This document shows positions 40,563 through 62,452 of a stretch of DNA of 64,000 bases, piece by piece (the stretch's first letter is position 1; each line of letters opens with the position of its first letter). This stretch comes from Podarcis cretensis. Its lineage: Eukaryota. Below the pieces are notes generated by a model. It worked only from the letters and a program-made list of their open reading frames with translations, made no database searches and had not been told where the DNA came from. A program made the translations under genes and the position numbers. Location: positions 29,822,001-29,886,000 of the forward strand of contig OX638164.1 in assembly GCA_951804945.1 (NCBI GenBank). Direction: 5' to 3'.

Positions 40563-43500
40563 CTACAAGGGGAAAAAACACCAGGAAGCAGGTAAAGGAG
40601 AGTCTAGCTAGTAGCACAGATATGTGGGCAGGAGGCAGTGCCACCAACCTTTGGAGATGGACACACAGGCCCACCGCCACCCCACCAGATGGATATCAAA
40701 TCAAGGAGGAAGTCATCTGGCAGACCAAGACTGCCTTTGATTTGGCCACAGTTGTGGAAGCCCAATATGGTGCTCTGACAGACCCCCAATGTGCAACCAT
40801 TGCTGTGAGGCAGCCTTTTGTAGTGAAAGGAATTTGCTTATTTTAGAAAATTGGGTATGCCTGGAACAGTAGAGCTAAGTGAGGCAGACTCAGGGATAAA
40901 TTGGGCTACCTTAACATCAAATGACTTTGGGCAAGGGGAGGTGCTTGGAGCTAAAGCCACCTAATATTTTCCTAGAAGAGATAAGCAATCAGTTGTTCAG
41001 CCTTGACCCTGATCCCTTCCCAGCCTTGTGAATACCTTAGGAGGTGCCTTGCAATTGTCGATCTATCCACAGTGACCCGAGAGGAAGGCAGCAGCACCGG
41101 GTCCATCATTAAAGTACTCATGATAGGGTCCAGAAACTCATCACAGGCATCCGCATAGGTCTCCTCTTCCTGCAGTTGGCGGTCTGCAAGGGACTAGAAG
41201 AAAGCCCAACAATTGTTAGAGAGGTCCCTGCCTGCTCAGGTCAATGGTGGGATGGATGACAGAAGGAAACTTCTCCCCAACACACCCAAGAAGCTCAGCA
41301 GACGACTAGTTGCCACCGAGCCTTTGTTTAAGGGCAACAAATGAGAGCAAAGTTGTATTCTTGGGCCTGGCTTAGCTCCAGGAAGCAGCAAGGAATGTAA
41401 TTCTGGCTTATGGAAGGGGCTAATGCTCCCACTACACTCAGTTTTGTTTCCTTCCCTTTCCTTTCATGGAGGGACTTAGTGAAAGCCTATAGCTCAGAGG
41501 GTCTGCTCCTTGCACATGCTACTAGGTAGAGAAAGCCTCCTTCTTGCAAGAGCATACACAAGCTGCCCAGCTCAAAATGCCAACAGCAGAGGATGAGGCA
41601 CCAACATGCAGCTCTCCAAAAAGGAGGGTTCCTTTGTGGAAAGCAGGGAGGAAGCTAGCGCCAGCTCCCCTCCACCACCCCTCACCTTGATCCTCTCTGC
41701 CAGGTTGCTAAATGCCACAATCATGTTGCCAGGCTTGTTAATCTTCTTCAGGACTCTGACTGTCTGAGCAAAAAGAGTTGGGGAATACGATCGCCCGTCC
41801 TTGGGCACTGTGGCACAAAAGTTCTCCTCGTCCCTGAAAGAGAAGAGGGATAAGACAACACTGGGAGCGGCAAGGCCCTTCTGCACATTCAAGCAAGGAA
41901 GGGAGCTTCTCTGCTCTCTTCCCTAGGCAAGCCCAGTCAGTCTGCCTTACAGCCTTCCACCTTTGGCATTCTCTTGCTCTCTCACACTTCCACAAGCATA
42001 CCAATGCCCTTGGCTTGGACAGACCAAAGGCTCAGCTGGCCCTGCCCTCTTTTTGCAACCGTGGTCAACGGAATGCTCCAGAAAAGGGAATGATGAGGGA
42101 AAGCATTCACTGATTTCCCCTGATACTCAGAAGGCTGCTGTCACCACCACCAAGTTGCCCTCTCCTTCCCAATACACATACCCCAGATTTAAGTAGATGG
42201 TGCAGATGTCAGAAACCAGCTGTTGGGGTTTGAAGTCAAACTCGCTGAAGTCTTTGACCTTTAAAGCCCCCATTTTGGGGCCCACCAAGTGCTGCAGGAA
42301 GTAGTTGAGCATGGAGATAATGCGCTCAGCCAGAAAGGGGTGCACAAAGAGGGACTTGATCTCTGCAATGTAAACCAGGTCTCTGTGAGGTCCCCTGAAC
42401 AGCCCAGCTCCCCTCCTCACTCCTAGCTGGAGAGTTCTGTCTTTACCTGAAGTCAGGAAGGCCAGGGTCCCAATGGTCTCATTGGACATGATGTTGTGGA
42501 AGCGAGCCAGCTGCCCAAACATCTGCAGGCTGGCTTCCTTCTCACGCCGCAGCTCTGTAGACAGGGCATCCCACTCACCCCGGTCCTTCTCAATCTGCTG
42601 GATCTTGATCTTACTCAGGTACTGCAGAGCAATTTGAGGTGGGGGAGAAAGGGAGAGAAGGAAGAAGGTGTATGAAGCACACGTAACCATAGCTCAGTAG
42701 TCCTCTGGCCCATTTTCCACAATCTTCTATTAAGGAGGTGGACAGCAGCTGAGAGGGGCAACAGCAACAGATCAGCCAGACTGAATTTCCGGAATGGGCC
42801 TCTTTCCTCAACACAGGCCAGATGCAGTTCTTCCAGACAGGCATGGCAGAATAGAGTTCTCCAGCTCACACCAGCAGAGGAAAGGATGAGAAAGAGCAGT
42901 AGAGCAAGTGAAGAACACACAACAGTATTCAGTAGGGGCAGGGGGAATGAATCTTACAAGCATGGGTAATGCAAATGAAGTTGGTCTAAAGCAGTGTTTC
43001 GCAAAGTGGGTGGTACCACCCCCAGGGATGAGGGTGGGATTACCTAGGGGGCTGCTAAGAGGCAAGGGGCATTGGTGGGGGGGGCACTGAAGGTGTAAAT
43101 TACTATCAAACTTTGAAAAGTTGGCATCACTGGATCTTGCTCATCAATTTTGTTGCATTAATTAAACTAAACAGTTTTAATTGGGCTCTGAACAAATATG
43201 CAATTAATTGCTCCTGCTCTGAATTTCGTTGTGTTGTAATTTTCCTTAGTGGACCACTATTTCGAATAATGCTTTTTAAAGGGGGGGGGTTGGCACTGGA
43301 GATGAGTCCATGGAACTGAAGGGGTGGTGACCCAAAAAAGTTAGGGAACCACTGGTTTAAAGTGTCTCCACGCACACAAACCCTTCGGGGGAACTGGCCT
43401 TAGTGCCACAGAGGCTGTCAGAGAAACTTCCTTTCACTCCCTCTCCTGAGCTAGTTTACAACGATCAGTTCAGAGACAGATAATCTTCCTAGAACTTTCA

Positions 43501-46500
43501 AGAACTCTCCTCCCACCCCCTCTCTCACACACAAACAAACAACCTTCCTGGTACAATCAGGGTAACTGCAGGTGGCAATTCCATTCATGGCTATGAGAAA
43601 TTCTTGTTTCATAGATCTTGGGACCATTTTATTTTCCTCTTTGGTGCTCCCTCCCATCATCAAAAAATAAATAAAAATGCTTTACCTGAATGGCTTCATC
43701 CAACAGGAAGATGGCATCATTCATGAGTAAGTTTAGGAAGCGCAAAAAGAGAGGGGGATTCATTGCTTCTAGGTTCTTTGAGGCATAGTCGGCAAGTGCC
43801 TGCAAGAAGAGGGAGGGAGAGAAAGAGATGTTTCCCACCCAGAGATGATTGCTGTCCTGGCTGAAGCAACTCGTGTACCTCCCAAGCCTTACCTTGATGC
43901 TTTCCCGGTAGGAATCAATGCCCCACATATACCTGAGGATGGGGTACATAGGCCTGCGATAGTTGAACTTCTGCTCGAACTGATGGGGATCCCCTAGGCA
44001 GGAGGAAAAGAACAGGCCAAGCCAAAATGAATGCCAGGATCTGGCAGCACCACAAGACCAAGGAAGGGATGTTTTGCTCACAATATGGCAGGTCCTCATG
44101 CTTCAAAGCTGCATCTTGGCATGGCAGTGTGCTACTGAATGTCCAGAGAGAACAGCAAAGGGCTGGCTCTTTCCACCCTCCACTTTCATGGTTTACACTC
44201 AAGAAAAAGCATGGACAGCTCAAAAATGTGCCCTGAGCCATGAATGGTACAGGGAGAGACGTCACCCATGTCTGGTGCATCACAAGGTGCTCAGAGGACT
44301 TGGGAGAAAAGGAAAGCCCCCTCGCCCCTGAGCGCTGCTATCACAGATGCAAAGCATGCGACTGGGAGGATGGCTCTGTTCAGCAGGAATGGAAATGGCA
44401 GCAGCTCAAGGAGGAGGAAGATGATGAAAGTGGCACCACTAGAGCAAGGTCCCTCTCTCCCACTGCCCCCTTACCAGTGAACTCAATGTCCACAAAGACC
44501 TTGATGAGTGCCTCGGCAAGGTAGGCAGCATGCCGGTAGGAGCAGAAGACCCTCTTGCGATGGAAGACACTGGAGACAAGGGGATTCTGCACCTGGTCCA
44601 TGTGAGGCATTACAGCCTCTAACACTTCAGCCAGCTTGGCTCGCAGGTGTGGGTTCTTCATCCTGCAGGAGGGCAAATTAGGATCAACCACCTGGGAGGA
44701 CATTCAAGGATGACTGTTAGCCCTGCCAACATATCCTGGAAGCTTTGCTTCTTAGTGGCTTCCTCTTTGTCTGCTGTTGACCGCAATTCAGAGACACCAA
44801 CTGGGGCAGAACTTGGAAGATGCCAGAACCATGAGGCAAGTGCCCCAACTTCTGCAAGTGTTACCTGATTTCTTCCTGGCTCAAGTGGAAATGTGGAATT
44901 TGATCTCATAAAACCCCAAAAGCTTGGACACTGAGGACCTTAGAGGATAACCTTATAATCAGCAGGGAAAGCCCTGCTGGTGGTGCCATTGCTGGCGGTG
45001 ACCCAAAACAAGACCTTCTTAGTGGCAGTTACCCTTTAGTGGAATACCCTCCCTTGTGAGGTTCATTTGTCTTCCTTACGATTAACTTTTATGAAAAAAA
45101 TTAAAACCTTCCTGTTTGCCCTGGCATTTCATGGCTGAAAGTTTTGTCCCCAGTAACCTTGAAATTATTAGTCTGAGTATAGGTAATTAATTTTAGGCAT
45201 TTTTAACTGTTCTTAGAAGTTTCAGTTGCGCTGTTTGACTACGGACATGCTTGCCACCCTGGGCTCCTTTGGAGGAAGGTGCATGATATAAATGGAATAA
45301 ACAAATAAACAAAAATAAATAGCTATCTCACAATGCAACAGTCAATATAGTTGTTAGAGCGAGGGTGGGGAAGCTCCAACCTACTGACCAAACATGGATC
45401 TGTAGGTATCTTTAGACCTGCCACGCCATTTTCAGAAAGCCACACCTGACAGGTAAGGATAGGACTTCAAAGACCCTTTGTTCAAGAATACAGAGGGAGG
45501 CAGAACAGGAAAGCATTACCAGCTGCCTGAATGGCTTAAGCTTTCTGCACCGCCATGCTAAGGTGCAGGAGCTGTAGCATCACTGCTTGGCTCAAAGGGG
45601 ATTGATTTGATCTGGCCATAACCTCTCTCCCTGCCTTTGTACTCCCAAATATTTACTGGTGACCACCCTTGAAGCCTGGATGAAGGACAATGAGGTGGAT
45701 AAGTGGCTGGAGAGGCCATTACCTGTCCACATCCCCAGTGAAGATAGTCACAAAATGAAGGATGTGCTCCAGGGAGTCAGCTGACGTTTCCAGAAGATCA
45801 TCAGCAAAGCGGCGCAAGAATATAAAGAAGTCACCCAAGTTGTCAGCAAAAAATTCTGCAAATACAAAGCTCCAAATGAGGTGCTTGCTGGGAAAATGTT
45901 CATACCCAGCCCTTGACCAGGAATAAAGAACTTACTTAATAGTACAAAGACTCCTCTAGAGCAGGACAGCATTTTAGCTTCTCCAGGGTCAAACTAAGCA
46001 TACTCCAATACACTACAACCTGGCCTTGCCTAAAGGTCACAGGAAGAGAAACCTATTTGTCAACATGGAAGGTGTTGGAAATGGATGCACACTTGCAGCT
46101 ATTTCACATCTAAGGATAGAGACAGATGTGTTTGTGTGTCCCCATCCACTTCACTGTCTCTCTAAGTTTAGCTTTTTAGGTAGCATACACCATCACTGCC
46201 AGCAAAACAGACTCCTCTTCTGGAATTGTACATCTTTCTGGCACCAAGGGAGAAGGTCCCTAAGATGTAGCAGGGGAATCTTTTAGAGCAATGTGGAATC
46301 TGTACAGCAAGTGATGTCCAATTCAGGTATTTTGTGTGGTGTCCTGGGAAGCACAGCTGGTTTGTATTTTTGGAAAAAGATACATTTGTCCTTAATTGCA
46401 AAGTCAAGCCTAAAACCACCTGGGCCTTCAGTGCCTGCTCGTGTGGGCTTCCATGTCTGGTGTTTCTCCTGCCAGCATAATTCTCAGACCCTCTTATACA

Positions 46501-49500
46501 TCAGCATCTCTTCCCTTCACAACTCCAGAAGCCTCAACCTTCCATCTCTAGACTGGAACTATAGACTGCACACAAGCACAGCCAATGCAATGTTTTGCCC
46601 CGATTAATTCAGCGATGGTGCATGGATGTTTTTTGGGTTGCCGGACTTAAGAATCCTAGACCATGGTCACCACTGCCACCTACCTACCTACCCAGGGATG
46701 CTGCAATAAACCAGCTAGGCCTGCTCCAGAGAGAGCAGAACTATAGGCCCCTGCTTGTAAACTATTTTGCTCCATCCCAGAACTTTTCTAGGTCAACTAA
46801 ACCCCGATGAGAACTACACAAGGGTATATTTTATAATTCTCTAGATGCCCATCATCAGACTAGAACAGCAAGGGTGCTCTTAACTTTCAGGAAACTGCTG
46901 GAGGAAAAGAGGTGTTCAAAATCTTTTGATGCCAATATAGGCCAAAGAGATAAGCCCAACATTTCTGAAGGGGAAACCCCTTGCTGGTCACCTGGGACAT
47001 AGGCCAGAGCATTCTTCTCCACCTCAGACAGAGGGAATGTCAGGTCTACCAGCTCGGTCCCTTGGTTTCCAATGGCCAGCTGGACCAGGAGAACAGCCAT
47101 GGAGACCTGCAGGTGAAGACAGTTCTGCAACATCTGCGGCTCTGTCATAGCTGTTTTGGTGGAGAGATAGATGGTCATGAGACGCTCAAACTGCTCCCGA
47201 AGGTTGTCTGCTGAAGGGCTGGAGCTCTGCTGAGCCTCTCGCCAGGCCACCTGCAGCCGGTGAAGGCTTTGGTTTAGTTTGATCATCTGGTCATGCAACC
47301 TGTACAAGCAACAGAAATACATACATTAACCAGAAGGACAGAAGCAAAGTGGGGTGTACAAGATAGCCTCTGTGAGTATCGGGGGGAGATGTCCAAGGCT
47401 CCCCCATTGAACTAGAGATGCAACAAACTCAGGTTCCCCAGGAACAGAACCAATTCTCTCTTCTGGATCACACAAGCAGCAAACTGGAACAAACTACTGC
47501 ATCCAGAGGCTTTTTGCAATCATTTATTTGATAGCTGCTTTGATTTGAGGGGGTTTCCACATCAAGGAGGGGGGCTTCAAGGGGACAGCTGGAAATCACG
47601 TGCATTGGCTTTACTGGTTTAGCTTCTTCATTATACCAGTAAAATCCCCTTTCCCCAAATCAATATCTGCTTAAACAAATTTGATTGGGGTGCTCTCATA
47701 TCACTGTTCTCGTTACAGGCTTTGCCTGTCAGTAGGATATCTCAGGTCACCTCAGCTTGCAAAGGCTGCCAACCAGGCTTTTACAGCCCAATCCTGCTGT
47801 AGGCAAATTTTCAGTGTCTAAGGAAGAGGCACCTGCAAGGCCTTGCCATTCCCACACACCCATATACCCTCTGGAGGCAGTACCTGTGAAATCCTAAATG
47901 GAGGGTATACTGGGTCAACACCAAGTTCTCCGTCACGAGGTTGTAGCTGGGGGCAAACTCTGGCTCCTGCTCAGTTGTGGCTGGGATCAAGCAGGTTTCT
48001 TTCTCCAAACCTTGAAGGAAGTTAACAGGAATTGCTTCCCCACCAAGCAACACCTACCAGGAGGATGCCAGAGCCAATGGGAGCACTCTGGTTTCCTCCA
48101 GCTCTTCCTCTGCCCTTGGCCAGCAGCCTCCTCCCTTACAGGCTGCCTTGCCAAGAGTATGAGGACAAGATTTGGGCACCTGCAAAGTCGTGGCTCACCT
48201 TTCATATGCACATTCTTGCTCCGCTGCTCTTCCTCATTCAGCTCTTTCAGCGCACAGTAGGTAGGGTCAAATGTGAGGAGCCGGGGCGATCTGGGCTTAC
48301 AAAAGGGCTGGCATAGCCTGAGGAGGGCGGCTCCCAAGTTCAGGAAGAAGGCATCCGAGGCATACATCTGGAAGAAAATCTCTGGCATCTGGTTGGCCCA
48401 TATCTTCGTGCGGCCTGCATTAGCATGGAGACAGTTTCCCAGCCAGGACAGGATTCGGTGCTTTGTTTGTGGTGATAGCTGCAGCAGGTTCTTGAGCATC
48501 TGGTAGATCTTCTCATGGAACTGAGCCATGAACTGTTACCAAAACATCAGAAGTCTTAAGATGTGTACAACACACACACTTGCTCAGTCAACTTAAACTG
48601 GGATCTTCCACATGCAGTATCTGTGCTCTACCCACTGAGCTATGCCTCCTCTCTCCTAAATGCCTTAACTTTCAGCAGTTAATGGGTCTTGGTCTTCTCA
48701 AATACCCCAAGCATCATGAATTTCCTGCAGAGGTTTTCACTATACTTTGATGTTGACAATCTGTGACTTAAGGAACAACCAAGAACCCACCAAATCACAC
48801 TAGAGAGATAAATTTAAGAGACAGAAGCTGTCATTTTCCGCCGCTGTCCCCTCTACTCTGCCTGGTTAAGCTACACTGGTATGAAATGTGCACCTCCACA
48901 CACCTGATGGATGTTGGATTCCTGCACCTTGATCTCCTGAGGGCTGGACCGAGAGGGATTCAAGAAGTAATCATGGTTCTCTACCACACCTGGGGTCTTC
49001 AACAAGCATGAGATGCTCAAGATAGCTCCCAGCAAAGTCTTCTGGTAGAGCTGCCCATTGGCTGGGTCCTTTGGCTGGATGTACTCTACAAAAACCTGAA
49101 CAAACAGAAATAGAAGGTACTGCTGGTCAGCCAGTACAGGTAAAGCCCCGATGTAAGTAGTGGAATGAAGGACACCCTTTTATGGAATGATGGCTCTGCC
49201 ATATTGGCCAGCCTATCATTGATGCATGTTGCAACCGCAGCACAGAATCAGGAAGACCATGCTTCCTTCACAGTGAAGAGAACAAGCAACTACCCCTCTG
49301 CCCAGGAGGGAAGCTGAAAATGGCCATGGCTAATTGCTTTGCTGCTCCCTGGCACCCTGAAGAGGCTAGCCAAATGCTCACTTTTGCTATATCTTTCTGC
49401 CTAGTGAAGTACAGGAGCATGTCCAGGTAGGAGTAGAGCAGGATCTGGCAAAGGTGCAGCTCTCGGATCCGTCCCAAGAGGATATCAAAGACAGGCACCA

Positions 49501-52500
49501 TTACTTCCTCAAAGGTCTTCACTTCCTCATCCATAGTGAGGCCTTCTATGACTTCCTCCAGGAACTCAGTTACATCTTCAAAGCCTACAGTAAGAGAGTA
49601 GGAGAGAAGTGAACACCAATCCTTTATGCATTCTCATAGAAAGATACAGGCACCCCAACACATTTACAACTATAATAAAAAGGTGGGGTATCTTTGAGGG
49701 ACCTCCTGCAGTTGTAGCCCATTATCTTCTTCTAGGGTGCCCAGCTCTGCCTCTGTAACTTACGGGCTCCTCTAAGGGACTCCAGCATCAAGTCCACTAG
49801 CTGCTCGTAGACATTTTGGTTGATATAGATCTCCGGGGTGAGGAGGACCGTGCGAGTGTTGGACACAGAAAGGTTTCGGCAGCGCATGGCAAAGGGCAAC
49901 AGGTTCTCTGGCACTTTGGTAATCTAGGAGAACAGAGGAGAGCACTTTGTCTCTGGTCTGCTGGGCTGCTCTGCTTAGGCAGTCAGACTTGCTGACAGGG
50001 ATGTGGGGCATTGACCCACCTCCTCCTTTGCCCTCTGGAAGCTGGCAAAGAGGTAGCGAAATATGTGCTTCTCCCCTGCATCTCTTTCAGCTGATAGATT
50101 CTGTATGCCAGCCGAGGTCATGTGAATCAGGTGATTCCCTGGTTCAGGGAGGAGTAGCCGGGTAAAGAGAGCCTGGAGAGACATGCCAAGCCAGACATAA
50201 ATGGTCAGTACACAACCCTGCCCACCCACCAGCCACAGAGGGCAAGTGTCCAACTATGTATCAAAAACAAACAGTAAGACCAGAAGGTCATCCAAGACAA
50301 CTTCTGTGGCTAAGGCCAGATCCTTCACCCACTTTATCATGAGTTGTAAGCAAATGGGTGATAGGATTCAGGCACCCAGGTCAGACAAGTCTGCTTGATT
50401 AAACAAAAAGTCCAAAATGCAACGTTGGTGGCTCTAGAACAGGGGTGGCTAACTTGTGCCCCTCCAGATGCTGTTGGACTATAACTCCCATCAGCCCCAA
50501 ACCAGTATGGCTAGTGGTTGAGGATTATTCAAGCTAAAGTCTAACAACATTTGCAGGTCCATAGGTTAGTCAGCCTTGCTCTATAAAGTGAGCACTACAA
50601 AAGGAGAGAAGGCAAATGTCTTCCATTCACAAGACTGATCCAGCTGAAGGGTCCTTCAAGAACATCAGCACAGAGAAGAGTGTGTCCTGAAGGGCAAAGC
50701 TTGCATCCTTCACCAAGGCTCACGGACGCTCTGCCAAGCCCTCAGTCAGGCAGAAAAATCAACTGCATTTGCATATGCACAGATACCTGCTCCACATTCT
50801 CCATGTCAAGCCAATCCTGATCCTCCAAGTCTGTTGCCATTTCCTCCAAGTACACACAGCGTGCAGGAATCCCATTGCCACTTTTGAGATTGGGGTCACC
50901 TGCAGGTTGGGAATCATCAAACCAGCAACATCAGTAACACCACAAGCATGAATCTGTGTCCCTACAAGCCCAAGCCCCCAACCCAGACATCATCCTCCCG
51001 CCCCATCTTTCTATTTATTTATTTATTTATTGAATTTATATACCGCCCTGTACCCAGAAGTCTCAGGGTGGTTTATAGAACAAAATCAACATATAAAACC
51101 ATAAAATATATAATCAAAATAAAAACAACAACCCAATAACCCCCCTCCCTAGTTTGGAAGACGTTAACTTCATTTTTCCTAAAGGCAGAATTTATTTTTA
51201 TCAGTTCACTGGCGAAGAGGAAGGGAGAGATTTAAGCTTTCTTTTATTGAGTGCCAGTGGCACAGCACATGCCTGAAGGGACACAGCCATTCCAGCATTT
51301 TGGAACAGTTTGAGAGACTTTTAAGGCAACTGATGCACATAGGAATCCAAGCTTGAGGGGTTTTCTTGCCTCACACAAATCATTGTGCAGCAGAATAGAG
51401 CAGCACTATTACAGGAAACACTACTCCCTGCCACCAAACTTAATGTGCCAGGAAAGTGACAAGCATAGTGTAAGAGAAACCGCACAGAGCCAAGTTCTTC
51501 TTTAGGAGATTCTGCAGCACATAGTACAGCAAAAGGAACTACAAGTGGAAGATTATCTGTGTTGAGTCTACAGCCACCATAGAACACTGCAGCCCTACTC
51601 TCAGGAAGCTGCAAAAATCCTAGTATAACTGAGAGTTCCTCCTAGTCTGGATCCCAGGAACTAACTCCCCATACTCACTGTTGTCAAGTGTGATCAGGAA
51701 GATTCTCTGGATCATGTGGTTGATGTTGAGCTGCTCACAGAGCTCCTGCTGGGAACGGAATGAGCGGCTGATCTCAGCCACGGAGTAGTCACAATCATCC
51801 AGGCTTTCAGACACGCTGTTGTCAGAATCATCTTGGCTGGCCGAGGTTTCCTCCACTGGAGAAGTAGAACTAGTTAAGAAGCAGCCTAACTTGGCCCCAC
51901 CAGGCACCAGCCATGCACCCTGGCCTTTTGCCCTGGAGGGCTCAGTGTCAAGAAGAAGGAGGGACCAGCATGGCCTTTGCCTCAGATTTGGCTTCTTGAT
52001 AACATGTCAGGCATCAGGCAAATATAGCTACCAGCCACAAAGTCAGCTTACCACAAATCACAAACATGTTGTTGTCGCCTCTAGAAAATGCGTGGAGACT
52101 GGTTGCCAGCCCCACATGGGTACCACTTGAACCTTATCACCCAAACACAATTTGTTTGCCTATCTGGGCCAACCAAGACACAGAAAGGCTGCCTCAGTGA
52201 CTATCGCGTCACAACGAACTCTCTCTGCTCTTCCAAAGATTTGCACAACCTGAAGCAGAGGAAAAACCCTTCCATTTGGAAGCCTGCAGTTAAGCCAGTG
52301 AAAAACTGAGGATTTCAGCACCTACTAGTTTTTATCCATTTTAATCCAATTCTTCTTTGCACCAATTCCTTAAAATCTGGATTAGTTCTTGCAAGCTATG
52401 GTTACTGACGCCCAACGTGTTTTTTTTTTGGGGGGGGGTGTAAAATGGTCTGTCTTTTAAAATAAGGACAGGGAGGGATGGGGGGTACAGACAAGATCAG

Positions 52501-52743
52501 CCAAGTGCTTTCAGCAATGCCTCCACGCGGGATTCAACCTTCGATCTGACCCAATGTTTCCTAGGCCAGGGGCGTCAACCCCCCCCCCCCCAAAGCGAGG
52601 CTGCCTCTCCCCCTCTCACCAACGGGCGGCGTCAGTTGCTGCTGCTTCTGGATCTCGGCGAAGTGCTTGGCGTCGGCGACGGAGCCGAAGAGGGCGGCGA
52701 AGGGGTTACTGGAGATACTGTTGTTGTTCTCCTGGTCGGTCAT
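40427..52743 (-). CDS. UBE4A: Ubiquitin conjugation factor E4 A (U-box E3/E4 ligase), 19 coding exons, 1074 aa
   Basis: [19 protein letters not shown] start, Ufd2 core and C-terminal U-box; exon lengths sum to 3225 nt in frame. Confidence 0.98.
41036..41193 (-). CDS. UBE4A: UBE4A coding exon 18 (U-box)
   Basis: [52 protein letters not shown]. Confidence 0.96.
41686..41833 (-). CDS. UBE4A: UBE4A coding exon 17
   Basis: [21 protein letters not shown]...LAERIK. Confidence 0.96.
42182..42362 (-). CDS. UBE4A: UBE4A coding exon 16
   Basis: [29 protein letters not shown]...ICTIYLNL. Confidence 0.96.
42447..42621 (-). CDS. UBE4A: UBE4A coding exon 15
   Basis: [18 protein letters not shown]...[12 protein letters not shown]. 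Confidence 0.96.
42992..43354. mobile_element. hAT (Charlie-like) MITE in a UBE4A intron
   Basis: TIR cagtgtttcgcaaagt / agttagggaaccactg; TSD gtctaaag / gtttaaag. Confidence 0.82.
43686..43799 (-). CDS. UBE4A: UBE4A coding exon 14
   Basis: [38 protein letters not shown]. Confidence 0.96.
43893..43993 (-). CDS. UBE4A: UBE4A coding exon 13
   Basis: [33 protein letters not shown]. Confidence 0.96.
44475..44662 (-). CDS. UBE4A: UBE4A coding exon 12
   Basis: [20 protein letters not shown]...VFVDIEFT. Confidence 0.96.
45723..45855 (-). CDS. UBE4A: UBE4A coding exon 11
   Basis: [43 protein letters not shown]. Confidence 0.95.
46992..47299 (-). CDS. UBE4A: UBE4A coding exon 10
   Basis: [24 protein letters not shown]...ALAYVP. 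Confidence 0.95.
47884..48010 (-). CDS. UBE4A: UBE4A coding exon 9
   Basis: [10 protein letters not shown]...[20 protein letters not shown]. Confidence 0.94.
48199..48532 (-). CDS. UBE4A: UBE4A coding exon 8
   Basis: [17 protein letters not shown]...KNVHMK. Confidence 0.96.
48904..49095 (-). CDS. UBE4A: UBE4A coding exon 7
   Basis: [23 protein letters not shown]...ESNIHQ. Confidence 0.95.
49382..49584 (-). CDS. UBE4A: UBE4A coding exon 6
   Basis: [13 protein letters not shown]...[10 protein letters not shown]. Confidence 0.95.
49764..49923 (-). CDS. UBE4A: UBE4A coding exon 5
   Basis: [33 protein letters not shown]. Confidence 0.95.
50020..50172 (-). CDS. UBE4A: UBE4A coding exon 4
   Basis: [20 protein letters not shown]...FQRAKEE. 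Confidence 0.95.
50440..50578. mobile_element. Short palindromic hAT-type MITE; related copies ~24890-25015, ~28680-28800, ~38664-38793, ~61475-61600
   Basis: Shared ggacta(c/t)aactcccatc / gatgggagttgtagt core; TSD ctctagaa / ctctataa. Confidence 0.75.
50787..50899 (-). CDS. UBE4A: UBE4A coding exon 3
   Basis: [37 protein letters not shown]. Confidence 0.95.
51679..51855 (-). CDS. UBE4A: UBE4A coding exon 2
   Basis: [19 protein letters not shown]...[13 protein letters not shown]. Confidence 0.94.
52620..52743 (-). CDS. UBE4A: UBE4A first coding exon
   Basis: [41 protein letters not shown]. Confidence 0.94.
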
Positions 52744-53070
52744 TTCCCCGCCAGGCGAACTCCATCCAGGGCTGGGGACCAAAGCGAGAGAAGGGCCTCA
52801 GAGGCCGCCTCAGAAGCCCTCTTTCCAGGGCCCGAGGAGGGAGCCTAGGAAGGCCCGACGCCGCTGACCCCCAGCTGCGGCAGAAGCGCCGGGCCAGGAG
52901 GCGACGGTGACGGTGATGGCGGCTCCCGCGCACGGAGGGCCTGCCGGCTGGGCCGAGCGACCCGCACCGCACCAAGGCTCCCCCAAACCAGGGCAACCCC
53001 ACCGGCCTGGCCTGGCCCTTCCAGCCCAAGGCTCGCAGCCACGGGACCCGCCGCTTCTTCGCCTGCTTAC

Positions 53071-55543: not shown

Positions 55544-55604
55544 ATGGGACGCAGCCAGCATCTCTTGTGTGCAACCTTCCTCTTTGGATTGCTCTTCTCC
55601 AAAG
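55544..55604 (+). CDS. CD3D: CD3gamma/delta exon 1 (signal peptide)
   Basis: MGRSQHLLCATFLFGLLFSK; phase-1 donor AAG|GTAGGA matches the Ig exon. Confidence 0.8.
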
Positions 55605-56154: not shown

Positions 56155-56201
<47 letters not shown>

Positions 56202-59200
56202 GTGTATGTGTGAGTGTCTGTTTGTGTTTGTATGAGAGAGAGGAGCAGAAGCAGACTTTCCTCTGTCCAATGTGCATAATTTCATATACCTCAATCATGT
56301 CCCATCTCCCCATCATCATTTTTTTAAAACTAAGACACCACAAATACATTAGCCTTTCCTTGTGACTGAGGGTGTTCTGGCCTCTTAATCATTTTGGCTG
56401 CCCCCACTTTTTTTTCTTTAGCTCTTTGGTGTCCTTATCGAGATGTGGCAGCCAGTAGTTCAAATGCAGCCACACTAGATTTACACAATGCTGTGTCCAT
56501 CTTATTGTCCCTTTCCTAGCTGTCTCTAGTGTGGTATTTGTCCTTTTCATTCTGCCACTGCTGCTGAACACCGAGTGATTGCTTCCATTGTTTTGCAGTG
56601 GGAAGGTGCAGGTGTTTGAGTTTGGGCTGCAGACATTGTCCTGACGTCTGTGTCCAGATGTGGGCATCGTTACCACTCCTTGACACCAATAAGCCCCTTC
56701 CCACAAAACATTTAAAATGTCTTGTTTCTGTTTCAGAAGTGGGTGAAGTAGTGCAATGTTGTGGCTGACTATTGGCACAACTTAACGTAATTCCCTCTTT
56801 TATTGGACAGTGGAATGACTTACCTTTCTTCATAGCTCAGTTGGTTAGAGGGTGGGTGCTGATAACGCCAGGGTTGCAGGTTTGATCCCCATATGGGACA
56901 GCTGTATATTCCTGCATTGCAGGAGGGAGTCAGCTTAATACTGTGGTACCTCAGGTTAAGAACTTAATTCGTTCTGGAGGTCTGTTCTTAACCTGAAACT
57001 GTTCTTAACCTGAAGCACCACTTTAGCTAATGGGGCCTCCCGCTGCCGCCACGCTGCTGCTACACAATTTCTGTTCTCATCCTGAAGTAAAGTTCTTTAC
57101 CCGAGGTAATATTTCTGGGTTAGCGGAGTCTGTAACCTGAAGCATATGTAACCCGAGGTACCACTGTAGCTTCCTCCTCTTCCAGCACAAGCAATATGGT
57201 CCATGTTTTTCATCACTTATGGGTGTTCCTGTGAAAGGGCCTTTACCTTACGGTTGTGGTCTTCCTTCGTGCATCCCAGCTGTGGCTGATCTTGGGTCCT
57301 TCTGAGTGCTAGATGGACCCAAGGGCTCTGTTCGGGTGTTTTCCTCCACCTTGTCATTCCTTCCTCATAGGTATTGCTGAGGAATCCATCACAGTGAAGC
57401 AGCAAAAGAATGACATTGTCCTCTACTGTGAAGCGGAGGGTAAAAACCTCCCAATAAGCTGGAATAAAGATGGGAATGCATTAAACCATGGAAACTCTAG
57501 TCTGTCTTTGGGTGCCATCCTGGATGACCCGAGAGGTGTCTTCGAGTGCAATAGCGCACGTCTTCAGGTGTTCGTCCGAAGTGCGTGAGCCCTTCCTCCC
57601 CCATGTGAAGGGACATGAAAGCAGTGCTACTCCAGAGTCACACAACTGAGGGGGTGGTGGGAAGGGGACACACCCAGATTTGTGGCCACTTGGTGGGGAC
57701 CATGACAACCCTGTCCAGTATGAATGTGCTTAGCCTGGCAGTTGTGATGTTGTCAATGGCCCTGGTGGAGCCTGCTTTCTTTGTTTCCTTTTATATATAT
57801 ATATATAAATTTTATGTTTTGGTTTTTCAATTTATTTATTTTTGCAAACATACAAATTGCAAAAACACAAATTACACACATTTCTAATGCACATATATTT
57901 GACTTCCTCCCTTTTGTGGTTTCCTTTTGATTTTAATTTTCATGCTGCATTTTCCACATTACTCCATCTAAAGTTATTCTTTAGTTTCTCATAATCATAC
58001 GTTTAACCACTTGTTTTACATTAATCCTGCTAATGAGGTATTTGTATACATAAGTTTTTCAAATTTTCCACAAATTTTCCCCAATCTTTAGGAATTTCTT
58101 CTTCTTCTTGGTTTCTTATTACACCCGTTAACCTTGCCATTTCGGCATAATCCATTAAGCCACTTTTCCAGGGTTGGTACTACATCTTCTTTCCATCTCT
58201 GGGCAAAAACCATTCTAGCTGCAGTTGTGGCATACATAAACAATTTTTTAGGGGGTCTTTTGGTATCTTACTATCTACTATCCCTAAAAGAAAAGCTTCT
58301 GTTTTTTTGTTAAAAGTTGTCTTAAACATTTTCTTCAATTCGTTATAAATCATTTCCCATAAAGCTTTTACTCTCTTACAAGATCACCACATATGGTAGA
58401 GAGTACTATCTTTTTCTGGGGCTTGTTTCCTAATTAATTGGTTAAATTAAATGAACAATCTTGTTTCAAAAGCAAACATTTTACTACCTGCTGTTGCATG
58501 GAAGATCTCAGACACCACTGGCAGCATTCATGGGAGCTGTCAAATACTAAATGCCTTTGCTCACATCAGATCTGACTGTGATTTCATTTTTTAAAGAAGT
58601 TGAAATCAAATATCAAATATCATTGGACGTCACACAATGACATCAAACTTAGAATACTTTTCAAATGAGAATTTTGAGTGACAAAATTTGTTTCTGTTCC
58701 ACTTTTAAGCCTCTTGGCTGGCTTGTTCTTTTGTTAGTGGTAAGTATCCTTCTAAGCATATTGCGCAGGTCTCTCTGCTGGTTCTGGTGCAGCAACAGTC
58801 CCTGGGCTCCGGGGTTTGTTTTGTTGGGTTGATGGGCTGTTTGGATGTTAGGAGTTGTGTTTAGCTAGAAAACCCACCCTACAAGCAGAAGTGCTTTTCA
58901 TTTAGTCCCAGATGGCAAATTGCTGTTTCCAGTGCTTTTTTCCCCCCAAAGCAAAACAAATATGTTTAGGGTTACTCTCATTTTGACTCCAGAAAATCAC
59001 CATTTTATAGTTCAAATCGTGGAAAATAAATACAGTAAATGGACAAAAGTACAAAGATTCACAAAATGTTTAGGGGTATGCATACCCCTGCATTCACCCC
59101 CCCCCCAAAAAAGCGCTGGCTGTTTCTAGTCACTCAGTGGCGAGGGACCATCCATTTACAGTGGTACCTCGAGTTAAAAACTTAATTTGTTCTGGAGGTC

Positions 59201-62200
59201 CGTTCTTAACCTGAAACTGTTATTAACCTGAAGCACCACTCTAGCTAATGGGGCCTCCCGCTGCCGCTGCGCCGCTGCTGCACGATTTCTGTTCTCATCC
59301 TGAAGCAAAGTTCTTAACCCGAGATACTATTTCTGGGTTAGCCGAGTCTGTAACCTGAAGTGTCTGTAACGTGATGTACCACTGTATTGATTATTCTTGT
59401 CGTTTATTAAATTTCTATCCTGCCTGTCCCCCCAAAGGAGCCCAGGGTGGCAAACATCAAAATTAGCACAGTTTCCATGTGCTCAGAGGCACACTCTATT
59501 CAAATCAAGCCACATGTGGACAAAACTCAGGTGTGCTTGTGAGCATAGGATGCATGTTGAGTTCTTTCCCTCTTGACACAGTGTGCCAGAATTGTATTCG
59601 TCTGGACGTTGCCGCGATCATGGGGATTCTGCTGGCCAGCATTGTGGCTACGTTTTTCCTGGCTGTTGGCGTATACTGCATTGCTGCGGGGGAGCCGGGC
59701 CGACGATCTCAGGGTGAGCATTGGGGGACAGGCAGTTGCTGGGAGATGGGGAAACAGCCTTGAAAAAGGGAGCAATGTCCATGTTGGCATCCACGTTCCC
59801 ATACCTGGTATATTTAATTTTTAATTCTGTTAATCACCCATTTGGAGTCATCCTGAAATTTCCTTTTTTGACTTTGCAGCTTCTGACAAGCAGACCCTAT
59901 TAGCCAATGAGCAGCTCTACCAGGTGAGTGGGTGCCTGTGGTCAGTCTCTTCCTCTCCTCCATGGTGGTGTTTTCCTGGACAGCTCCTCCCAAGCTGTGA
60001 AATGAGGGGCCCTTTGCATCCAAGAATTCCTTGACTTCTGCAAAGCTTCTTCTGCCTCAGCCTAGGGTGCTGCTTTGCAGAGGCAATATATTCTTCTGGG
60101 AATCATGATTCTGTCTGTGTGTTCTTTTAAAAAGCTAGTTTCTAGCCCTCATGGCCAGAGATTAGCCTCCCAATGGGGTAAAATGAAGAGACTGTGGTGG
60201 CAGAAAATCCCCAAAGCAACTTCATTTGGAAAAAAAATATATATTAAAGGAAGAATAAATGGATGATGAGAACACCTGCAGTCCTTTCTGGACAACTGAA
60301 GTTTGCTGTGATGTGGGGCTTGTAGCAGGAAGCAGGGAGAGTCCTCCATCCCTTGAAACAGGAGCAGCAGCTGGTTCCAAATATGAGGTGTGTTGGTGCT
60401 CCCAGCCCTTTCCTCTCTGGCTTGGAATCAAAGGCCATTCTTAAGCCTCCATTCTTAAGTGGAAGAAGCACTCAGCCTACACCTATCCTTCCATAGGAAA
60501 CAGAGCAGCTTTCTTTTCTTCCCTAGATAGCAGCCTCCTCGGACACAAATGCGTAAGCTGAATCCAAGAGGTCTAGGCACACAATCTCTCCCATGAGTAA
60601 GCAGCACTAGATTTAGGGTGGTGGCACTGAGTCAAGGGGGCGCATGATAGTGCTGTTGTTAATACCTATATTTATATAGGTAACTACAGTGGTACCTCGG
60701 GTTAAGTACTTAATTCATTCCGGAGGTCCGTTCTTAACCTGAAACTGTTCTTAACCTGAAGCACCACTTTAGCTAATGGGGCCTCCTGCTGCCGCTGCGC
60801 TGCCGGAGCCCAATTTCTGTTCTCATCCTGAAGCAAAGTTCTTAACCTGAAGCACTATTTCTGGGTTAGCGGAGTGTGTAACCTGAAGCATATGTAACCT
60901 GAAGCATGTGTAGCCTGAGGTACCACTGTACTAAGAAGATTCACGAAAAATCAGCTGCACCAAAATGAATTGTTGGGAAAATAAGATGGGGGGGGGCGGG
61001 CGCCAAATTTTGTCCTTGCTCAGGGCACCATATTACCAAAGTTCGCCCCCGGAGTGAGCAGTTGCAAACGGACATCAAACTCCAGTGGCACAATTTTAAG
61101 AGAGTTTATTTTGAATGAGGTTTACGAAATAAGCATTTCAAGTCTATTGACATTCTTCAGCTTACAAGCAAGTTTCCACACTCTTCAGCAGTAACGTGGC
61201 ATCATTGTGTGTGGTCTGATTGTTGGCAATGTTCTGTTTTTAAGAGCTCTTGGTTCAGGTGGGTTCTGATTGATCGGTGGCTCTAATTAGCTGATAGGAA
61301 GAGAAGCATAGTGCCAGGGTGGGTGCCACCTTTTGGAAGTGGGTAGACTGGGCTTTCATGACTTCATCACTGCAGGAGTTGCCCAACTTCCCTCTGCTTG
61401 TGCATTGGAGGGGAGACTAGGGTGGGGTGGGGTAGGGTGCAGGCTCCCCACTTAACACGACAGAGGATCAGAGCAGCTGTGGGGAACCTTTGGTACTCTA
61501 ATACGGCTGAACTAAAACTCCCACCATCCCTGTCCATTAGCCAGGCTTGCTGGGGCTGATGGGAGTTGTAGTTCAGCAAAGGCAGGGGAGGGGTGAGATT
61601 CCCAGCTCCTGGTCTAGAAAAACTGGGTACTCTTAAAGGGACAGGCTAGGTCAGAACCAGGTTAGCCCAGCATTGAGACATTTCAAGTGGTCAGGGGACT
61701 ACAGGGTGAGCAGCCCTTGCAGCAACTCTTTCATACAGAGCCTGCTGTAAGGTCTGTGCATGTTTGTTTCTACTCTGGGTGTTCATTGGGATAGCTGCTG
61801 GATTTCCTGGTCTTTTTAAAAAAACAAAGAGTAGACAGAGAAAGTGAATCTAAGGTTGCAGAAGCTTCTGCTCTGGTAAACCTGCTAAATCTTTTAACGT
61901 GCCATGAAAAGGCAGGCAGTAGTACTAAGAAAGAAGTGATTGTGCTGCTGGTTCCACAGAAACTGTCATATTTTTTTGTGAGATGGAAGAAATATTGGGA
62001 AAACTCCGATCTGTCATGGGCAGGTCATGACACCACGCAACCTCTTGCCATAAAAAAATGAATAAACAAAGGGCAGGGACTCCAGGCTGGGCAGCTGAAA
62101 TAGATCCAGCCTTTGCTTGTTTTGCTGCAGCAGACTAACCCAGCTGCCCCCATGGAAATCCCTGCAGCCTCCAGATAGCTAACAGGAACCCCCATCTCCA

Positions 62201-62452
62201 GTGGCGTCAGGATGGGTCAAGTGCAGCCGGGGGTGGGGGGGCTTTCAATGCAGACGCGGTCCGCTAGCAGTCCCATGAGCCAGACCAGCCTTGCCCAAAT
62301 CCTCCTCGGTCAACCTGCAAGTTCCTAGGGCAGGTTAAGAAAAGTACAGACCCCTGTTCTAACTTCAGGCCTCTCTTCCCCTCCAGCCTCTCGGAGAACG
62401 CAACAATGGGCAGTACAGCCACATCGGAGTGGCCAAGACCCGCCACCGGTGA
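55544..62452 (+). CDS. CD3D: T-cell surface glycoprotein CD3 gamma/delta chain (non-mammalian CD3G/D type), 5 exons, 170 aa
   Basis: Signal peptide, Ig domain (C..W..DPRG..C), RMCQNC stalk, TM helix, SDKQTLL motif, ITAM YQPL-x7-YSHI; exons 61/210/132/44/66 nt; syntenic with UBE4A. Confidence 0.93.
56156..56201. repeat. Compound (GT)n(GA)n microsatellite
   Basis: Seen directly. Confidence 0.95.
56833..56922 (+). mobile_element. tRNA-derived SINE head (tRNA-Ile-like)
   Basis: TAGCTCAGTTGGTTAGAG A-box, GGTTTGATCCCC B-box, then non-tRNA body. Confidence 0.7.
56941..57166 (-). mobile_element. Same MITE family, copy 3 (CD3 intron 1)
   Basis: TIRs and TA TSD. Confidence 0.9.
57371..57580 (+). CDS. 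CD3D: CD3gamma/delta Ig-domain exon
   Basis: IAEESITVKQQKNDIVLYCEAEGKNLPISWNKDG...DDPRGVFECNSARLQVFVR. Confidence 0.92.
57790..58416 (-). mobile_element. L1-clade LINE 3' fragment (ORF2 C-terminus and 3' UTR)
   Basis: Minus strand reads approx. TLYHMW*SCKRVKALWEMIYNELKKMFK...EAFLLG and FMYATTAAR...AQRWK. Confidence 0.8.
59159..59384 (-). mobile_element. Same MITE family, copy 4 (CD3 intron 2)
   Basis: TIRs and TA TSD. Confidence 0.9.
59582..59713 (+). CDS. CD3D: CD3gamma/delta stalk and transmembrane exon
   Basis: MCQNCIRLDVAAIMGILLASIVATFFLAVGVYCIAAGEPGRRSQ. Confidence 0.94.
59880..59923 (+). CDS. CD3D: CD3gamma/delta cytoplasmic exon (44 nt)
   Basis: ASDKQTLLANEQLYQ; donor CAG|GTGAGT. 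Confidence 0.95.
60687..60928 (-). mobile_element. Same MITE family, copy 5 (CD3 intron 4)
   Basis: TIRs and TA TSD; possibly nested in an older element at ~60602-61051. Confidence 0.9.
62111..62158 (+). mobile_element. Short Penelope pLTR fragment
   Basis: ttttgctgcagcagactaacccagctgcccc resembles ttttgactatggcagaccaacacggctacct of the 35.7-kb element. Confidence 0.4.
62387..62452 (+). CDS. CD3D: CD3gamma/delta last coding exon (ITAM end)
   Basis: PLGERNNGQYSHIGVAKTRHR*. Confidence 0.93.
   Translation, partial: PLGERNNGQYSHIGVAKTRHR

What the first reader, a model, noticed from the sequence alone, without database searches (positions are those of the whole stretch)
59582..59713. Intact CD3gamma/delta chain lacks the conserved transmembrane acidic residue (Asp/Glu to Ser) and has CxxCxE changed to CxxCxR
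Seen: the exon translates [35 protein letters not shown]. Position 20 from the stalk Met is Ser (AGC, 59638-59640) and there is no acidic residue inside the hydrophobic stretch. Position 7 is Arg (CGT, 59599-59601). Established: human CD3D ([20 protein letters not shown]), human CD3G ([20 protein letters not shown]) and chicken CD3gamma/delta have D/E at position 20 and E at position 7. With the CD3epsilon Asp, this residue pairs with the TCR alpha/beta TM lysines during receptor assembly. AGC is at least two substitutions from any Asp or Glu codon, so a single-base error is unlikely, and splice sites, the dileucine motif and the ITAM are intact. Inference: this lizard may build its TCR with altered intramembrane chemistry, or this may be a diverged paralogue acting as a signalling adaptor. 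Squamates are reported to have lost gamma-delta TCR loci, so their TCR system is already unusual. I cannot tell whether this is lineage-wide or already described.
Basis: partly seen in the sequence, partly recalled or inferred. Interest (0 to 1): 0.85.

Follow-up and report, generated by a model that had tools for sequence, protein, structure and literature searches.

The report
Lizard CD3 chain lacking membrane acid
This lizard's only CD3 gamma/delta gene, like that of every non-gecko lizard and snake sampled, has serine (asparagine in one cordylid) where other vertebrates keep a membrane-buried acidic residue held to be essential for T-cell-receptor assembly, so these animals are a natural test of that rule.

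Summary
Exon 59582-59713 (+) is the stalk/transmembrane exon of a complete five-exon CD3 gamma/delta gene lying head-to-head with a UBE4A-type gene. AGC (Ser, 59638-59640) replaces the conserved Asp/Glu, and CGT (Arg, 59599-59601) replaces the Glu of CxxCxE. Contigs from two samples of the same species match the exon exactly. Spliced, RNA-like contigs from two related species keep both codons.

The change is lineage-wide:
- 22 named non-gekkotan squamate species have Ser, and one cordylid has Asn.
- Seven named geckos keep Asp or Glu, and tuatara keeps Asp.
- Of 175 non-squamate sequences, 172 have Asp or Glu.

The gene tree follows the species tree and needs only one change within squamates. 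Ser20 is among the slowest-evolving sites (relative rate 0.15), and Thr24 is invariant.

This is the functional orthologue, not a paralogue or an error. My best reading is that the TCR lysine now meets one Asp (presumably from CD3 epsilon) plus Ser/Thr hydroxyls. That step is inferred, because CD3 epsilon could not be fetched.

A 2026 review calls both acids "absolutely required" and conserved in all vertebrates with T cells. I found no paper describing this exception.

The parts
55544..55604 (+). CD3 gamma/delta exon 1 (start codon and signal peptide)
   Evidence: tblastn of the Podarcis and Zootoca orthologues. ATG and a gt donor are read directly.
57371..57580 (+). Exon 2, the Ig ectodomain. 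Its last base, A, starts the Met codon completed by exon 3.
   Evidence: Pfam PF16680 Ig_4 (CD3 delta), 33.6 bits against a cut-off of 30.1. Joined directly to exon 3 in spliced contigs X16 record 17 and X15 record 9.
59582..59713 (+). Exon 3: stalk CxxC motif, transmembrane helix and start of the cytoplasmic tail
   Evidence: PDB matches to CD3 delta and gamma. 100% identical to the Podarcis muralis protein P0001.
59584..59595 (+). CxxC stalk motif (TGC CAG AAT TGT), intact
   Evidence: Read directly. Invariant in 21 non-gekkotan squamates.
59599..59601 (+). CGT Arg at the CxxCxE position, where Glu is canonical
   Evidence: Unchanged in four runs. Squamates have Q, H, R or L here, and only Varanus and Elgaria have E. 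Of 175 non-squamate sequences, 163 have E.
59638..59640 (+). AGC Ser at the transmembrane position that is Asp or Glu in other vertebrates
   Evidence: Unchanged in four runs. Ser in 22 named non-gekkotan squamate species and Asn in one. Among 175 non-squamate sequences, 155 have D and 17 have E. Relative site rate 0.15.
59650..59652 (+). ACG Thr four residues after the Ser. This is the Thr of the canonical DxxxT motif, here SxxxT.
   Evidence: Read directly. Invariant in the 21 aligned non-gekkotan squamates, rate 0.12. The truncated Phrynocephalus model, not in that alignment, has Ile here and Ser at +3. The DxxxT motif is described in PMC13107469.
59880..59923 (+). Exon 4: dileucine motif SDKQTLL and the first ITAM tyrosine (YQ)
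   Evidence: tblastn and boundaries ag/gt. A 41-nt stretch of spliced contig X16 record 17 lies between exons 3 and 5.
62387..62452 (+). Exon 5: rest of the ITAM (PL ... YSHI), C-terminus, and stop TGA at 62450-62452
   Evidence: tblastn, 100% to P0073. Boundary read. Weak ITAM match for this half-motif (17 bits); the full motif scores 27.7 bits in P0073.
41572..52782 (-). Neighbouring UBE4A-type ubiquitin elongation factor gene, head-to-head with CD3 gamma/delta (synteny context)
   Evidence: Six minus-strand ORFs match Pfam PF10408 Ufd2P_core. Profile positions fall from 575-627 at 41.6 kb to 45-144 at 48 kb. An N-terminal exon-like ORF lies at 52561-52782. The name UBE4A rests on my memory of the human locus.

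Best explanation
This is the single, orthologous, functional CD3 gamma/delta gene of a lacertid lizard.

In the common ancestor of non-gekkotan squamates (NCBI clade Unidentata), the membrane-embedded Asp of the DxxxT assembly motif was replaced by Ser. The route was probably GAY to AAY (Asn) to AGY. The Ser has since been held by purifying selection.

The chain most likely still pairs with CD3 epsilon and still docks on the transmembrane lysines of the TCR chains through the same helix face. The contact would then be one lysine, one aspartate (from CD3 epsilon) and the Ser and Thr hydroxyls, instead of one lysine and two carboxylates.

Shown: gene identity, synteny, spliced transcript-like contigs in two related lacertids, lineage-wide distribution, and constraint on Ser20, Thr24 and the surrounding helix stripe.

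Inferred: that CD3 epsilon keeps its Asp, that the interface is the same, and that Ser acts as a hydrogen-bond partner.
For: Sequence and reads:
- establish the codons, the exon structure and agreement with four runs.
- Spliced contigs in related lacertids and a Crotalus horridus entry named 'CD3 gamma/delta' (T1E6Z3), which I take to come from a transcriptome, indicate expression.

Orthology:
- There is one copy and one TM exon in the window.
- A UBE4A-type gene lies next door.
- In the tree, squamates form a clade (100/98), and geckos (100/100) are sister to a clade holding all Ser/Asn sequences (93/75). Only one change is needed inside squamates.

Distribution:
- Ser in 22 named species across lacertids, an amphisbaenian, agamids, anoles, Sceloporus, Varanus, Elgaria, ten snakes and two skinks.
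- Asn in the cordylid Hemicordylus.
- Asp or Glu in 7 named geckos, Asp in tuatara, and Asp or Glu in 172 of 175 other sequences.

Constraint:
- The tree of the 21 non-gekkotan sequences is 7.17 substitutions per site long.
- Ser20 has a relative rate of 0.15, in the lowest 14% of sites; the TM mean is 0.77.
- The slow sites 19, 20, 23, 24, 26, 27, 28, 30 and 31 form two adjacent helical stripes.
- The tail with the dileucine motif and ITAM is conserved throughout.

The lysines are still there. The skink Tiliqua rugosa is reported to keep Arg/Lys in TCR alpha and Lys in TCR beta and TRE (PMC11754216), and Tiliqua scincoides CD3 gamma/delta has Ser.
Against: - In human DAP12 with KIR, an Asp/Ser pair reduced assembly 'to very low levels' (PMC1440944).
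- A 2026 review says both acids of each CD3 pair are absolutely required and that even Asp-to-Asn compromises assembly (PMC13107469). A simple swap should therefore not work without compensation, and I could not look for that compensation.
- No squamate CD3 epsilon, zeta or TCR constant-region sequence was examined here.
- The TM region is less conserved relative to the tail in all squamates (0.61 vs 0.75; geckos 0.62 vs 0.89; turtles, crocodilians and birds 0.82 vs 0.83). This could mean a loosened interface rather than a remodelled one.
- There are no biochemical data.
Confidence: 0.6

Rival explanations
1. Compensation elsewhere. The lost negative charge or binding energy is supplied by another part of the complex. 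Candidates are a second acidic or polar residue in CD3 epsilon or a TCR chain, a changed TCR lysine environment, or stronger ectodomain and connecting-peptide contacts. In that case Ser20 is only a tolerated small polar residue, not an active partner.
For: Mutagenesis in mammalian systems says an Asp/Ser pair alone is insufficient. The stalk Glu of CxxCxE also changed in squamates, and the whole TM evolves faster relative to the tail. Both suggest a broader remodelling of the membrane-proximal interface. Clade-specific changes occur near the cytoplasmic end of the helix: His33 in all ten snakes, and Lys or Arg33 in skinks and the cordylid.
Against: Ser20 and Thr24 are among the most conserved sites. 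This argues that the position still matters in its own right. T. rugosa TCR chains are reported to keep the canonical basic residues. No compensating residue has been identified.
Confidence: 0.28
2. Uncoupling. In non-gekkotan squamates CD3 gamma/delta no longer docks on the TCR through the membrane. It acts as a TCR-independent or loosely associated ITAM adaptor, which is the reader's second idea but applied to the orthologue.
For: Both charged hallmarks (the TM acid and the CxxCxE Glu) are lost. Pogona has a predicted isoform without the TM exon.
Against: The Ig domain, the CxxC stalk, the helix face, the dileucine motif and the ITAM are all conserved over a tree of 7.2 substitutions per site. 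No other gamma/delta-type chain that could take its place was found. By established knowledge, T cells need CD3 heterodimers to put the TCR on the surface.
Confidence: 0.06
3. Artefact, private mutation or decaying gene copy.
For: None found. X1 may be the sample the assembly came from, so it is not independent.
Against: A second sample of the species and two related species carry the same codons. 22 other species have Ser. The frame, splice sites and motifs are intact, and spliced contigs exist.
Confidence: 0.01

Closest known systems
CD3 gamma/delta of non-mammalian vertebrates
   Same: Same gene by tree and by neighbourhood. Same architecture: signal peptide, one Ig domain, CxxC stalk, one TM helix, dileucine motif and one ITAM.
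   Different: The TM Asp is replaced by Ser, and the Glu of CxxCxE by Arg. The TM is more variable relative to the tail.
Human CD3 delta and CD3 gamma in the TCR-CD3 cryo-EM structures (for example 6jxr chains d and g)
   Same: The exon aligns end to end without gaps to CD3 delta, and with one single-residue gap to CD3 gamma (E 8e-9 and 4e-8). CxxC, Gly15, Ala/Thr19, Thr/Ser24 and the small-residue pattern are shared.
   Different: Human delta has Asp and human gamma has Glu opposite lizard Ser20. Both have Glu opposite Arg7.
Engineered Asp/Ser and Asp/Asn pairs in DAP12 dimers (PMC1440944)
   Same: If CD3 epsilon keeps its Asp, the lizard CD3 epsilon-gamma/delta dimer would present the same Asp/Ser combination to a receptor lysine.
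   Different: In DAP12 with KIR the Asp/Ser pair reduced assembly to very low levels. In squamates the combination is fixed and conserved, so the natural context must tolerate or compensate for it.
Gecko CD3 gamma/delta (Gekko, Heteronotia, Paroedura, Eublepharis, Sphaerodactylus)
   Same: Squamate orthologues. They have already lost the CxxCxE Glu (all have Gln) and have a fast-evolving TM.
   Different: They keep Asp or Glu at the TM site. One unnamed gecko-like sequence (P0053) has Asn.

Membership tests
CD3 gamma/delta subunit (membership by descent) | CD3-type Ig ectodomain (Pfam PF16680 Ig_4) | tested here: met
   Exon 2 scores 33.6 bits against a cut-off of 30.1. The P. muralis orthologue scores 56.8 bits.
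CD3 gamma/delta subunit (membership by descent) | Groups with CD3 gamma/delta orthologues in a tree that follows the species tree | tested here: met
   using database orthologues. P. muralis P0073 is 89-100% identical to the window exon by exon.
CD3 gamma/delta subunit (membership by descent) | Conserved neighbourhood next to UBE4A | tested here: met
   A Ufd2P_core gene lies on the minus strand at 41.6-52.8 kb, head-to-head with the CD3 gene. The name UBE4A and the human gene order come from memory.
CD3 gamma/delta subunit (membership by descent) | Membrane-proximal CxxC stalk motif | tested here: met
   TGC CAG AAT TGT at 59584-59595.
CD3 gamma/delta subunit (membership by descent) | Cytoplasmic dileucine motif and one ITAM | tested here: met
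   SDKQTLL, and YQPL followed by 7 residues and YSHI. PF02189 scores 27.7 bits in P0073.
Canonical TCR-CD3 intramembrane assembly module (one basic and two acidic residues, DxxxT) | Acidic residue (Asp or Glu) in the TM helix of the gamma/delta-type chain | tested here: not met
   Ser (AGC, 59638-59640), with no acidic residue in the helix.
Canonical TCR-CD3 intramembrane assembly module (one basic and two acidic residues, DxxxT) | Thr or Ser one helical turn below the acid | tested here: met
   Thr24 (ACG, 59650-59652), invariant in the 21 aligned non-gekkotan squamates.
Canonical TCR-CD3 intramembrane assembly module (one basic and two acidic residues, DxxxT) | Glu of the stalk CxxCxE motif | tested here: not met
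   Arg (CGT, 59599-59601).
Canonical TCR-CD3 intramembrane assembly module (one basic and two acidic residues, DxxxT) | Partner CD3 epsilon with a TM Asp, and TCR chains with a TM Lys | not testable with these tools
   CD3E lies outside the window. The lysines in T. rugosa TCR chains are known only from a paper.
Canonical TCR-CD3 intramembrane assembly module (one basic and two acidic residues, DxxxT) | Physical assembly with TCR and CD3 epsilon | not testable with these tools
   This needs reconstitution or co-immunoprecipitation.

The most novel reading that the evidence does not exclude
Most squamates (all lizards and snakes outside geckos) assemble their TCR-CD3 complex with only one acidic residue per TCR lysine, in a Lys-Asp-Ser/Thr network. 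This would break the two-acid rule that is held to be universal and indispensable for activating immunoreceptors. The changes that make it possible, in CD3 epsilon, the TCR chains or the stalk, could be found by comparing geckos and tuatara with the other squamates.
Probability: 0.5. Interest if true: 0.85.

Novelty: new variant of a known kind. Interest (0 to 1): 0.78.

Why it matters
The rule of one basic and two acidic residues is the textbook organising principle of the TCR-CD3 complex and of many other activating immunoreceptors. It rests on mutagenesis in human and mouse proteins and on the belief that the residues are conserved in every vertebrate with T cells (PMC13107469).

A clade of roughly ten thousand species (figure from the abstract of PMC11754216) has kept Ser at one of these positions. 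By my memory of published dates, this has lasted on the order of 150-200 million years. It is a natural counter-example. It has built-in controls: geckos and tuatara keep the acid, and a cordylid has the Asn that could be the intermediate.

It makes a long-standing question directly testable: how much of the assembly energy really comes from the second carboxylate, and what can replace it? It also adds a second oddity to squamate T-cell biology, after the loss of the gamma-delta TCR and the TRB-like TRE locus.

It bears on engineered receptors as well, because they reuse CD3 transmembrane domains.

Tried and rejected
- **Neighbouring locus.** I could not fetch the P. muralis locus to look downstream for CD3E or a second gamma/delta copy.
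- **CD3 epsilon.** No seed sequence was available from any tool. The protein atlas lists CD3 epsilon clusters but gives no usable ids.
- **Joined protein.** Exons were searched by reference, and database orthologues stood in for the whole protein.
- **dN/dS and codon history.** Neither dN/dS nor ancestral codon reconstruction was run, because no coding DNA of other squamates was reachable. Protein site rates were used instead.
- **Hidden exon or copy.** A sensitive tblastn with TM exons of tuatara, geckos, turtle, crocodile, pheasant, axolotl and the cordylid found only 59581-59712 in the window.
- **Earlier scan notes.** They hold nothing on CD3.
- **Literature.** Ten full-text searches found no paper describing the squamate substitution. 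Morrissey et al. 2022 (PMC9012676) is not held, and subscription journals are not covered.
- **Complex prediction.** Not used, because I had no partner sequences.
- **Assembly gap.** The N run at 4849-4977 was left alone.
Full report
**1. What is at the coordinates**

The + strand from 59582 to 59713 is an exon with an ag acceptor (59580-59581) and a gt donor (59714-59715). With the last base of the preceding exon (A at 57580), it reads Met-Cys-Gln-Asn-Cys-Ile-Arg-Leu-Asp. A hydrophobic helix follows, and then Gly-Glu-Pro-Gly-Arg-Arg-Ser-Gln.

Arg7 is CGT (59599-59601), Ser20 is AGC (59638-59640) and Thr24 is ACG (59650-59652). No acidic residue lies between Asp9 and Glu38.

Against the sequences of solved structures, the exon matches only CD3 delta and CD3 gamma chains (best E 8e-9). 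The match to delta has no gaps, and the match to gamma has one single-residue gap after the helix. In those alignments Ser20 lies opposite Asp (delta) or Glu (gamma), and Arg7 lies opposite Glu.

**2. The whole gene and its setting**

tblastn with the closest database proteins and direct reading give five exons on the + strand:

| Exon | Coordinates | Content |
|---|---|---|
| 1 | 55544-55604 | signal peptide |
| 2 | 57371-57580 | Ig domain |
| 3 | 59582-59713 | stalk and transmembrane helix |
| 4 | 59880-59923 | SDKQTLL and the first ITAM tyrosine |
| 5 | 62387-62452 | rest of the ITAM and the stop |

All splice sites are canonical. Exon 2 passes Pfam's threshold for the CD3 delta-type Ig domain.

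Upstream, on the minus strand from about 41.6 to 52.8 kb, lies a gene with a Ufd2P_core domain in the expected exon order. By my memory of the human 11q23 locus, this is UBE4A. An earlier scan note places ATP5MG further left. This is the conserved CD3 neighbourhood.

The window holds one CD3 gamma/delta copy and one TM exon. A sensitive search with acid-bearing TM exons of other species found nothing else. CD3E would lie beyond the window's end.

I did not build or search the joined protein.

**3. Is it an error, and is it expressed?**

Contigs from two samples of the same species cover 59434-60632 or further with no difference in the exon. The first sample may be the one the assembly came from.

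Two runs from related species behave like RNA. They cover the exons but not the unique parts of the introns. X16 record 17 is a single 926-nt contig that joins exon 2, exon 3, a 41-nt stretch fitting exon 4, and exon 5. X15 record 9 joins exon 2 to exon 3.

In exon 3, X16 differs only by a synonymous change at 59643. X15 differs at 59628 (synonymous), 59632 (Leu18Val), 59643 (synonymous) and 59678 (Cys33Tyr). Neither codon in question differs anywhere.

**4. How widespread it is**

A phmmer search of the exon against 1.84 billion cluster representatives gave 57 hits, of which 56 are CD3 gamma/delta-type. Cluster look-ups and three homologue searches put names on them. I read the residue 18 positions after the first Cys of CxxC.

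| Group | Residue at the TM site |
|---|---|
| Non-gekkotan squamates, 22 named species | Ser |
| Cordylid *Hemicordylus capensis* | Asn |
| Geckos, 7 named species | Asp in *Gekko kuhli*, *G. japonicus*, *Heteronotia*, *Paroedura*; Glu in *Sphaerodactylus*, *Eublepharis* |
| Unnamed gecko-like sequences | one Asp, one Asn |
| Tuatara | Asp |
| All 175 non-squamate sequences (tuatara included) | 155 Asp, 17 Glu, 2 Asn (shrew CD3 delta, round goby), 1 Ser (a sawshark chain) |

The 22 Ser species are two lacertids, *Rhineura*, two agamids, two anoles, *Sceloporus*, *Varanus*, *Elgaria*, ten snakes and two skinks.

At the CxxCxE position, squamates have Gln (all geckos, skinks, *Pogona*), His, Arg or Leu. 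Only the two anguimorphs have Glu. Of the 175 non-squamate sequences, 163 have Glu.

**5. One event, in the orthologue**

A maximum-likelihood tree of 49 full-length proteins follows the species tree. Squamates form a clade (100/98). Geckos (100/100) are sister to a clade that holds every Ser or Asn sequence (93/75). The cordylid groups with the skinks (99/91).

The acid/non-acid label needs two changes on the whole tree, one inside squamates and one for the sawshark. NCBI taxonomy calls the non-gekkotan clade Unidentata.

The substitution therefore arose once, after geckos split off, in the orthologue and not in a paralogue. No squamate yielded a second, acid-bearing protein. Those searches are not exhaustive, however.

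Asp (GAY) to Ser (AGY) needs two base changes, and Asn (AAY) is one possible intermediate. The cordylid Asn could be a retained intermediate or a reversal. Both histories cost three base changes, so I cannot choose between them without coding DNA.

**6. Is the Ser constrained?**

The tree of the 21 non-gekkotan sequences is 7.17 substitutions per site long.

- Ser20 has a relative rate of 0.15, in the lowest 14% of all sites. The mean over the helix is 0.77.
- Thr24 is invariant (rate 0.12).
- The slow sites are 19, 20, 23, 24, 26, 27, 28, 30 and 31. They form two adjacent stripes with the spacing expected for a helix-helix interface.
- The neighbouring positions 17, 18, 21, 22 and 25 each take five or six different residues.

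The tail with the dileucine motif and ITAM is conserved in all full-length sequences.

At the same time, the TM region as a whole is less conserved relative to the tail in squamates. Mean pairwise identity is 0.61 vs 0.75, and in geckos 0.62 vs 0.89. In turtles, crocodilians and birds it is 0.82 vs 0.83. So the membrane-proximal part began to evolve faster in the squamate stem, together with the loss of the stalk Glu. The acid was replaced later.

**7. How it most likely works**

Established knowledge, as summarised in a 2026 review (PMC13107469):

- Each CD3 heterodimer presents two acidic residues, each within a DxxxT motif, to one TCR lysine.
- Both acids are "absolutely required", and even Asp to Asn compromises assembly.

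In DAP12 with KIR, an Asp/Ser pair reduced assembly to very low levels (PMC1440944).

For the skink *Tiliqua rugosa*, TCR alpha is reported to keep Arg and Lys, and TCR beta and the TRB-like TRE chain to keep Lys (PMC11754216). *Tiliqua scincoides* CD3 gamma/delta has Ser.

My best reading (confidence 0.6) is that the chain still docks on the TCR lysines through the same face. The polar cluster would now be Lys, one Asp from CD3 epsilon, and the Ser20 and Thr24 hydroxyls. That is a neutral ion pair with hydrogen-bond support rather than a net negative triad.

The main rival (0.28) is that the missing energy comes from changes elsewhere, in CD3 epsilon, the TCR chains, the stalk or the ectodomains. 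The two are not exclusive.

Uncoupling from the TCR (0.06) and an artefact (0.01) are unlikely.

A possible side effect is speculation only. Unpaired charged TM residues are known signals for retention and degradation of unassembled chains, so a Ser chain might escape that control.

**8. Relation to loss of the gamma-delta TCR**

The loss is described as universal in squamates (abstract of PMC11754216). Geckos keep the acid, so the Ser is not a direct correlate of that loss.

The stalk Glu loss and the faster TM evolution do coincide with the squamate stem. This fits a relaxation of constraint that later allowed Asp to change. That is an inference.

**9. Novelty**

The sequences are public and annotated as CD3 gamma- or delta-like. 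Ten full-text searches found no paper that mentions the substitution. The most recent specialist review states universal conservation.

The library lacks most subscription journals, and Morrissey et al. 2022 is not held. An earlier remark elsewhere therefore cannot be excluded; I put that chance at roughly one in four.

I class it as a new variant of a known kind. It is a member of the CD3 gamma/delta family by descent, but it fails two hallmarks of the canonical assembly module.

**10. Limits**

- There is no coding DNA of other species, so no dN/dS.
- The RNA nature of X15 and X16 is inferred from spliced contigs and exon-only coverage.
- Species labels of Logan-derived proteins are unknown.

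Noticed in passing
P0098 (Hemicordylus capensis), P0053 (unnamed gecko-like Logan contig): Asn occupies the TM site in a cordylid and in one gecko-like sequence. Asn (AAY) is the one-step intermediate between Asp (GAY) and Ser (AGY). Geckos as a group show Asp, Glu and Asn at a site that is otherwise almost invariant.
   Followed up: partly
P0047 (Pristiophorus sawshark), P0006 (Sorex araneus CD3 delta), P0055 (Neogobius melanostomus): These are the only three non-squamate exceptions among 175 sequences: Ser in a sawshark 'CD3 delta chain-like' protein, and Asn in shrew CD3 delta and in a goby CD3 gamma/delta. Sharks are reported to have two CD3 copies (PMC6795676), so the sawshark chain may be a paralogue.
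   Followed up: no
P0132 versus P0076 (Pogona vitticeps isoforms X2 and X1): The predicted isoform X2 joins the Ig exon directly to the SDKQTLL exon. It skips the stalk/TM exon, which would give a chain with no membrane anchor.
   Followed up: no
Position 33 of the exon (window 59677-59679, Cys) in relatives: Clade-specific residues sit near the cytoplasmic end of the helix. All ten snakes have His. Skinks and the cordylid have Lys or Arg. Geckos have Trp at position 32. Snakes also have an extra Ser at position 17.
   Followed up: no
window 59924-60028; P0001 and P0002: The UniRef models for Podarcis muralis (P0001) and Anolis carolinensis (P0002) read through the exon 4 donor into the intron. 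They therefore lack the second half of the ITAM. The same read-through frame is open in the window. These look like annotation artefacts, and the NCBI model P0073 is spliced correctly.
   Followed up: partly
window 58170-58517, 58866-59387, 60606-60953, 61476-61649; also 53576-53779: Very high-copy interspersed repeats lie in the CD3 introns, with contig depths up to millions. A recurring ORF peptide beginning MLQDENR appears at 53576-53779 (+), 59174-59308 (-) and 60702-60836 (-). These are probably SINE or LINE fragments.
   Followed up: no
P0046 and P0059 (Gekko kuhli): Two proteins differing by one residue carry different locus tags on the same 85-Mb contig. Both are flagged UNVERIFIED_CONTAM. 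This may be an assembly duplication or a real recent duplicate.
   Followed up: no
window 56035-56365: Dinucleotide microsatellites (CA/TG and CT/AG runs) lie in intron 1 of the CD3 gene. They are visible as His-Thr and Ser-Leu repeat ORFs.
   Followed up: no
window 4849-4977: A run of 129 N, which is an assembly gap.
   Followed up: no
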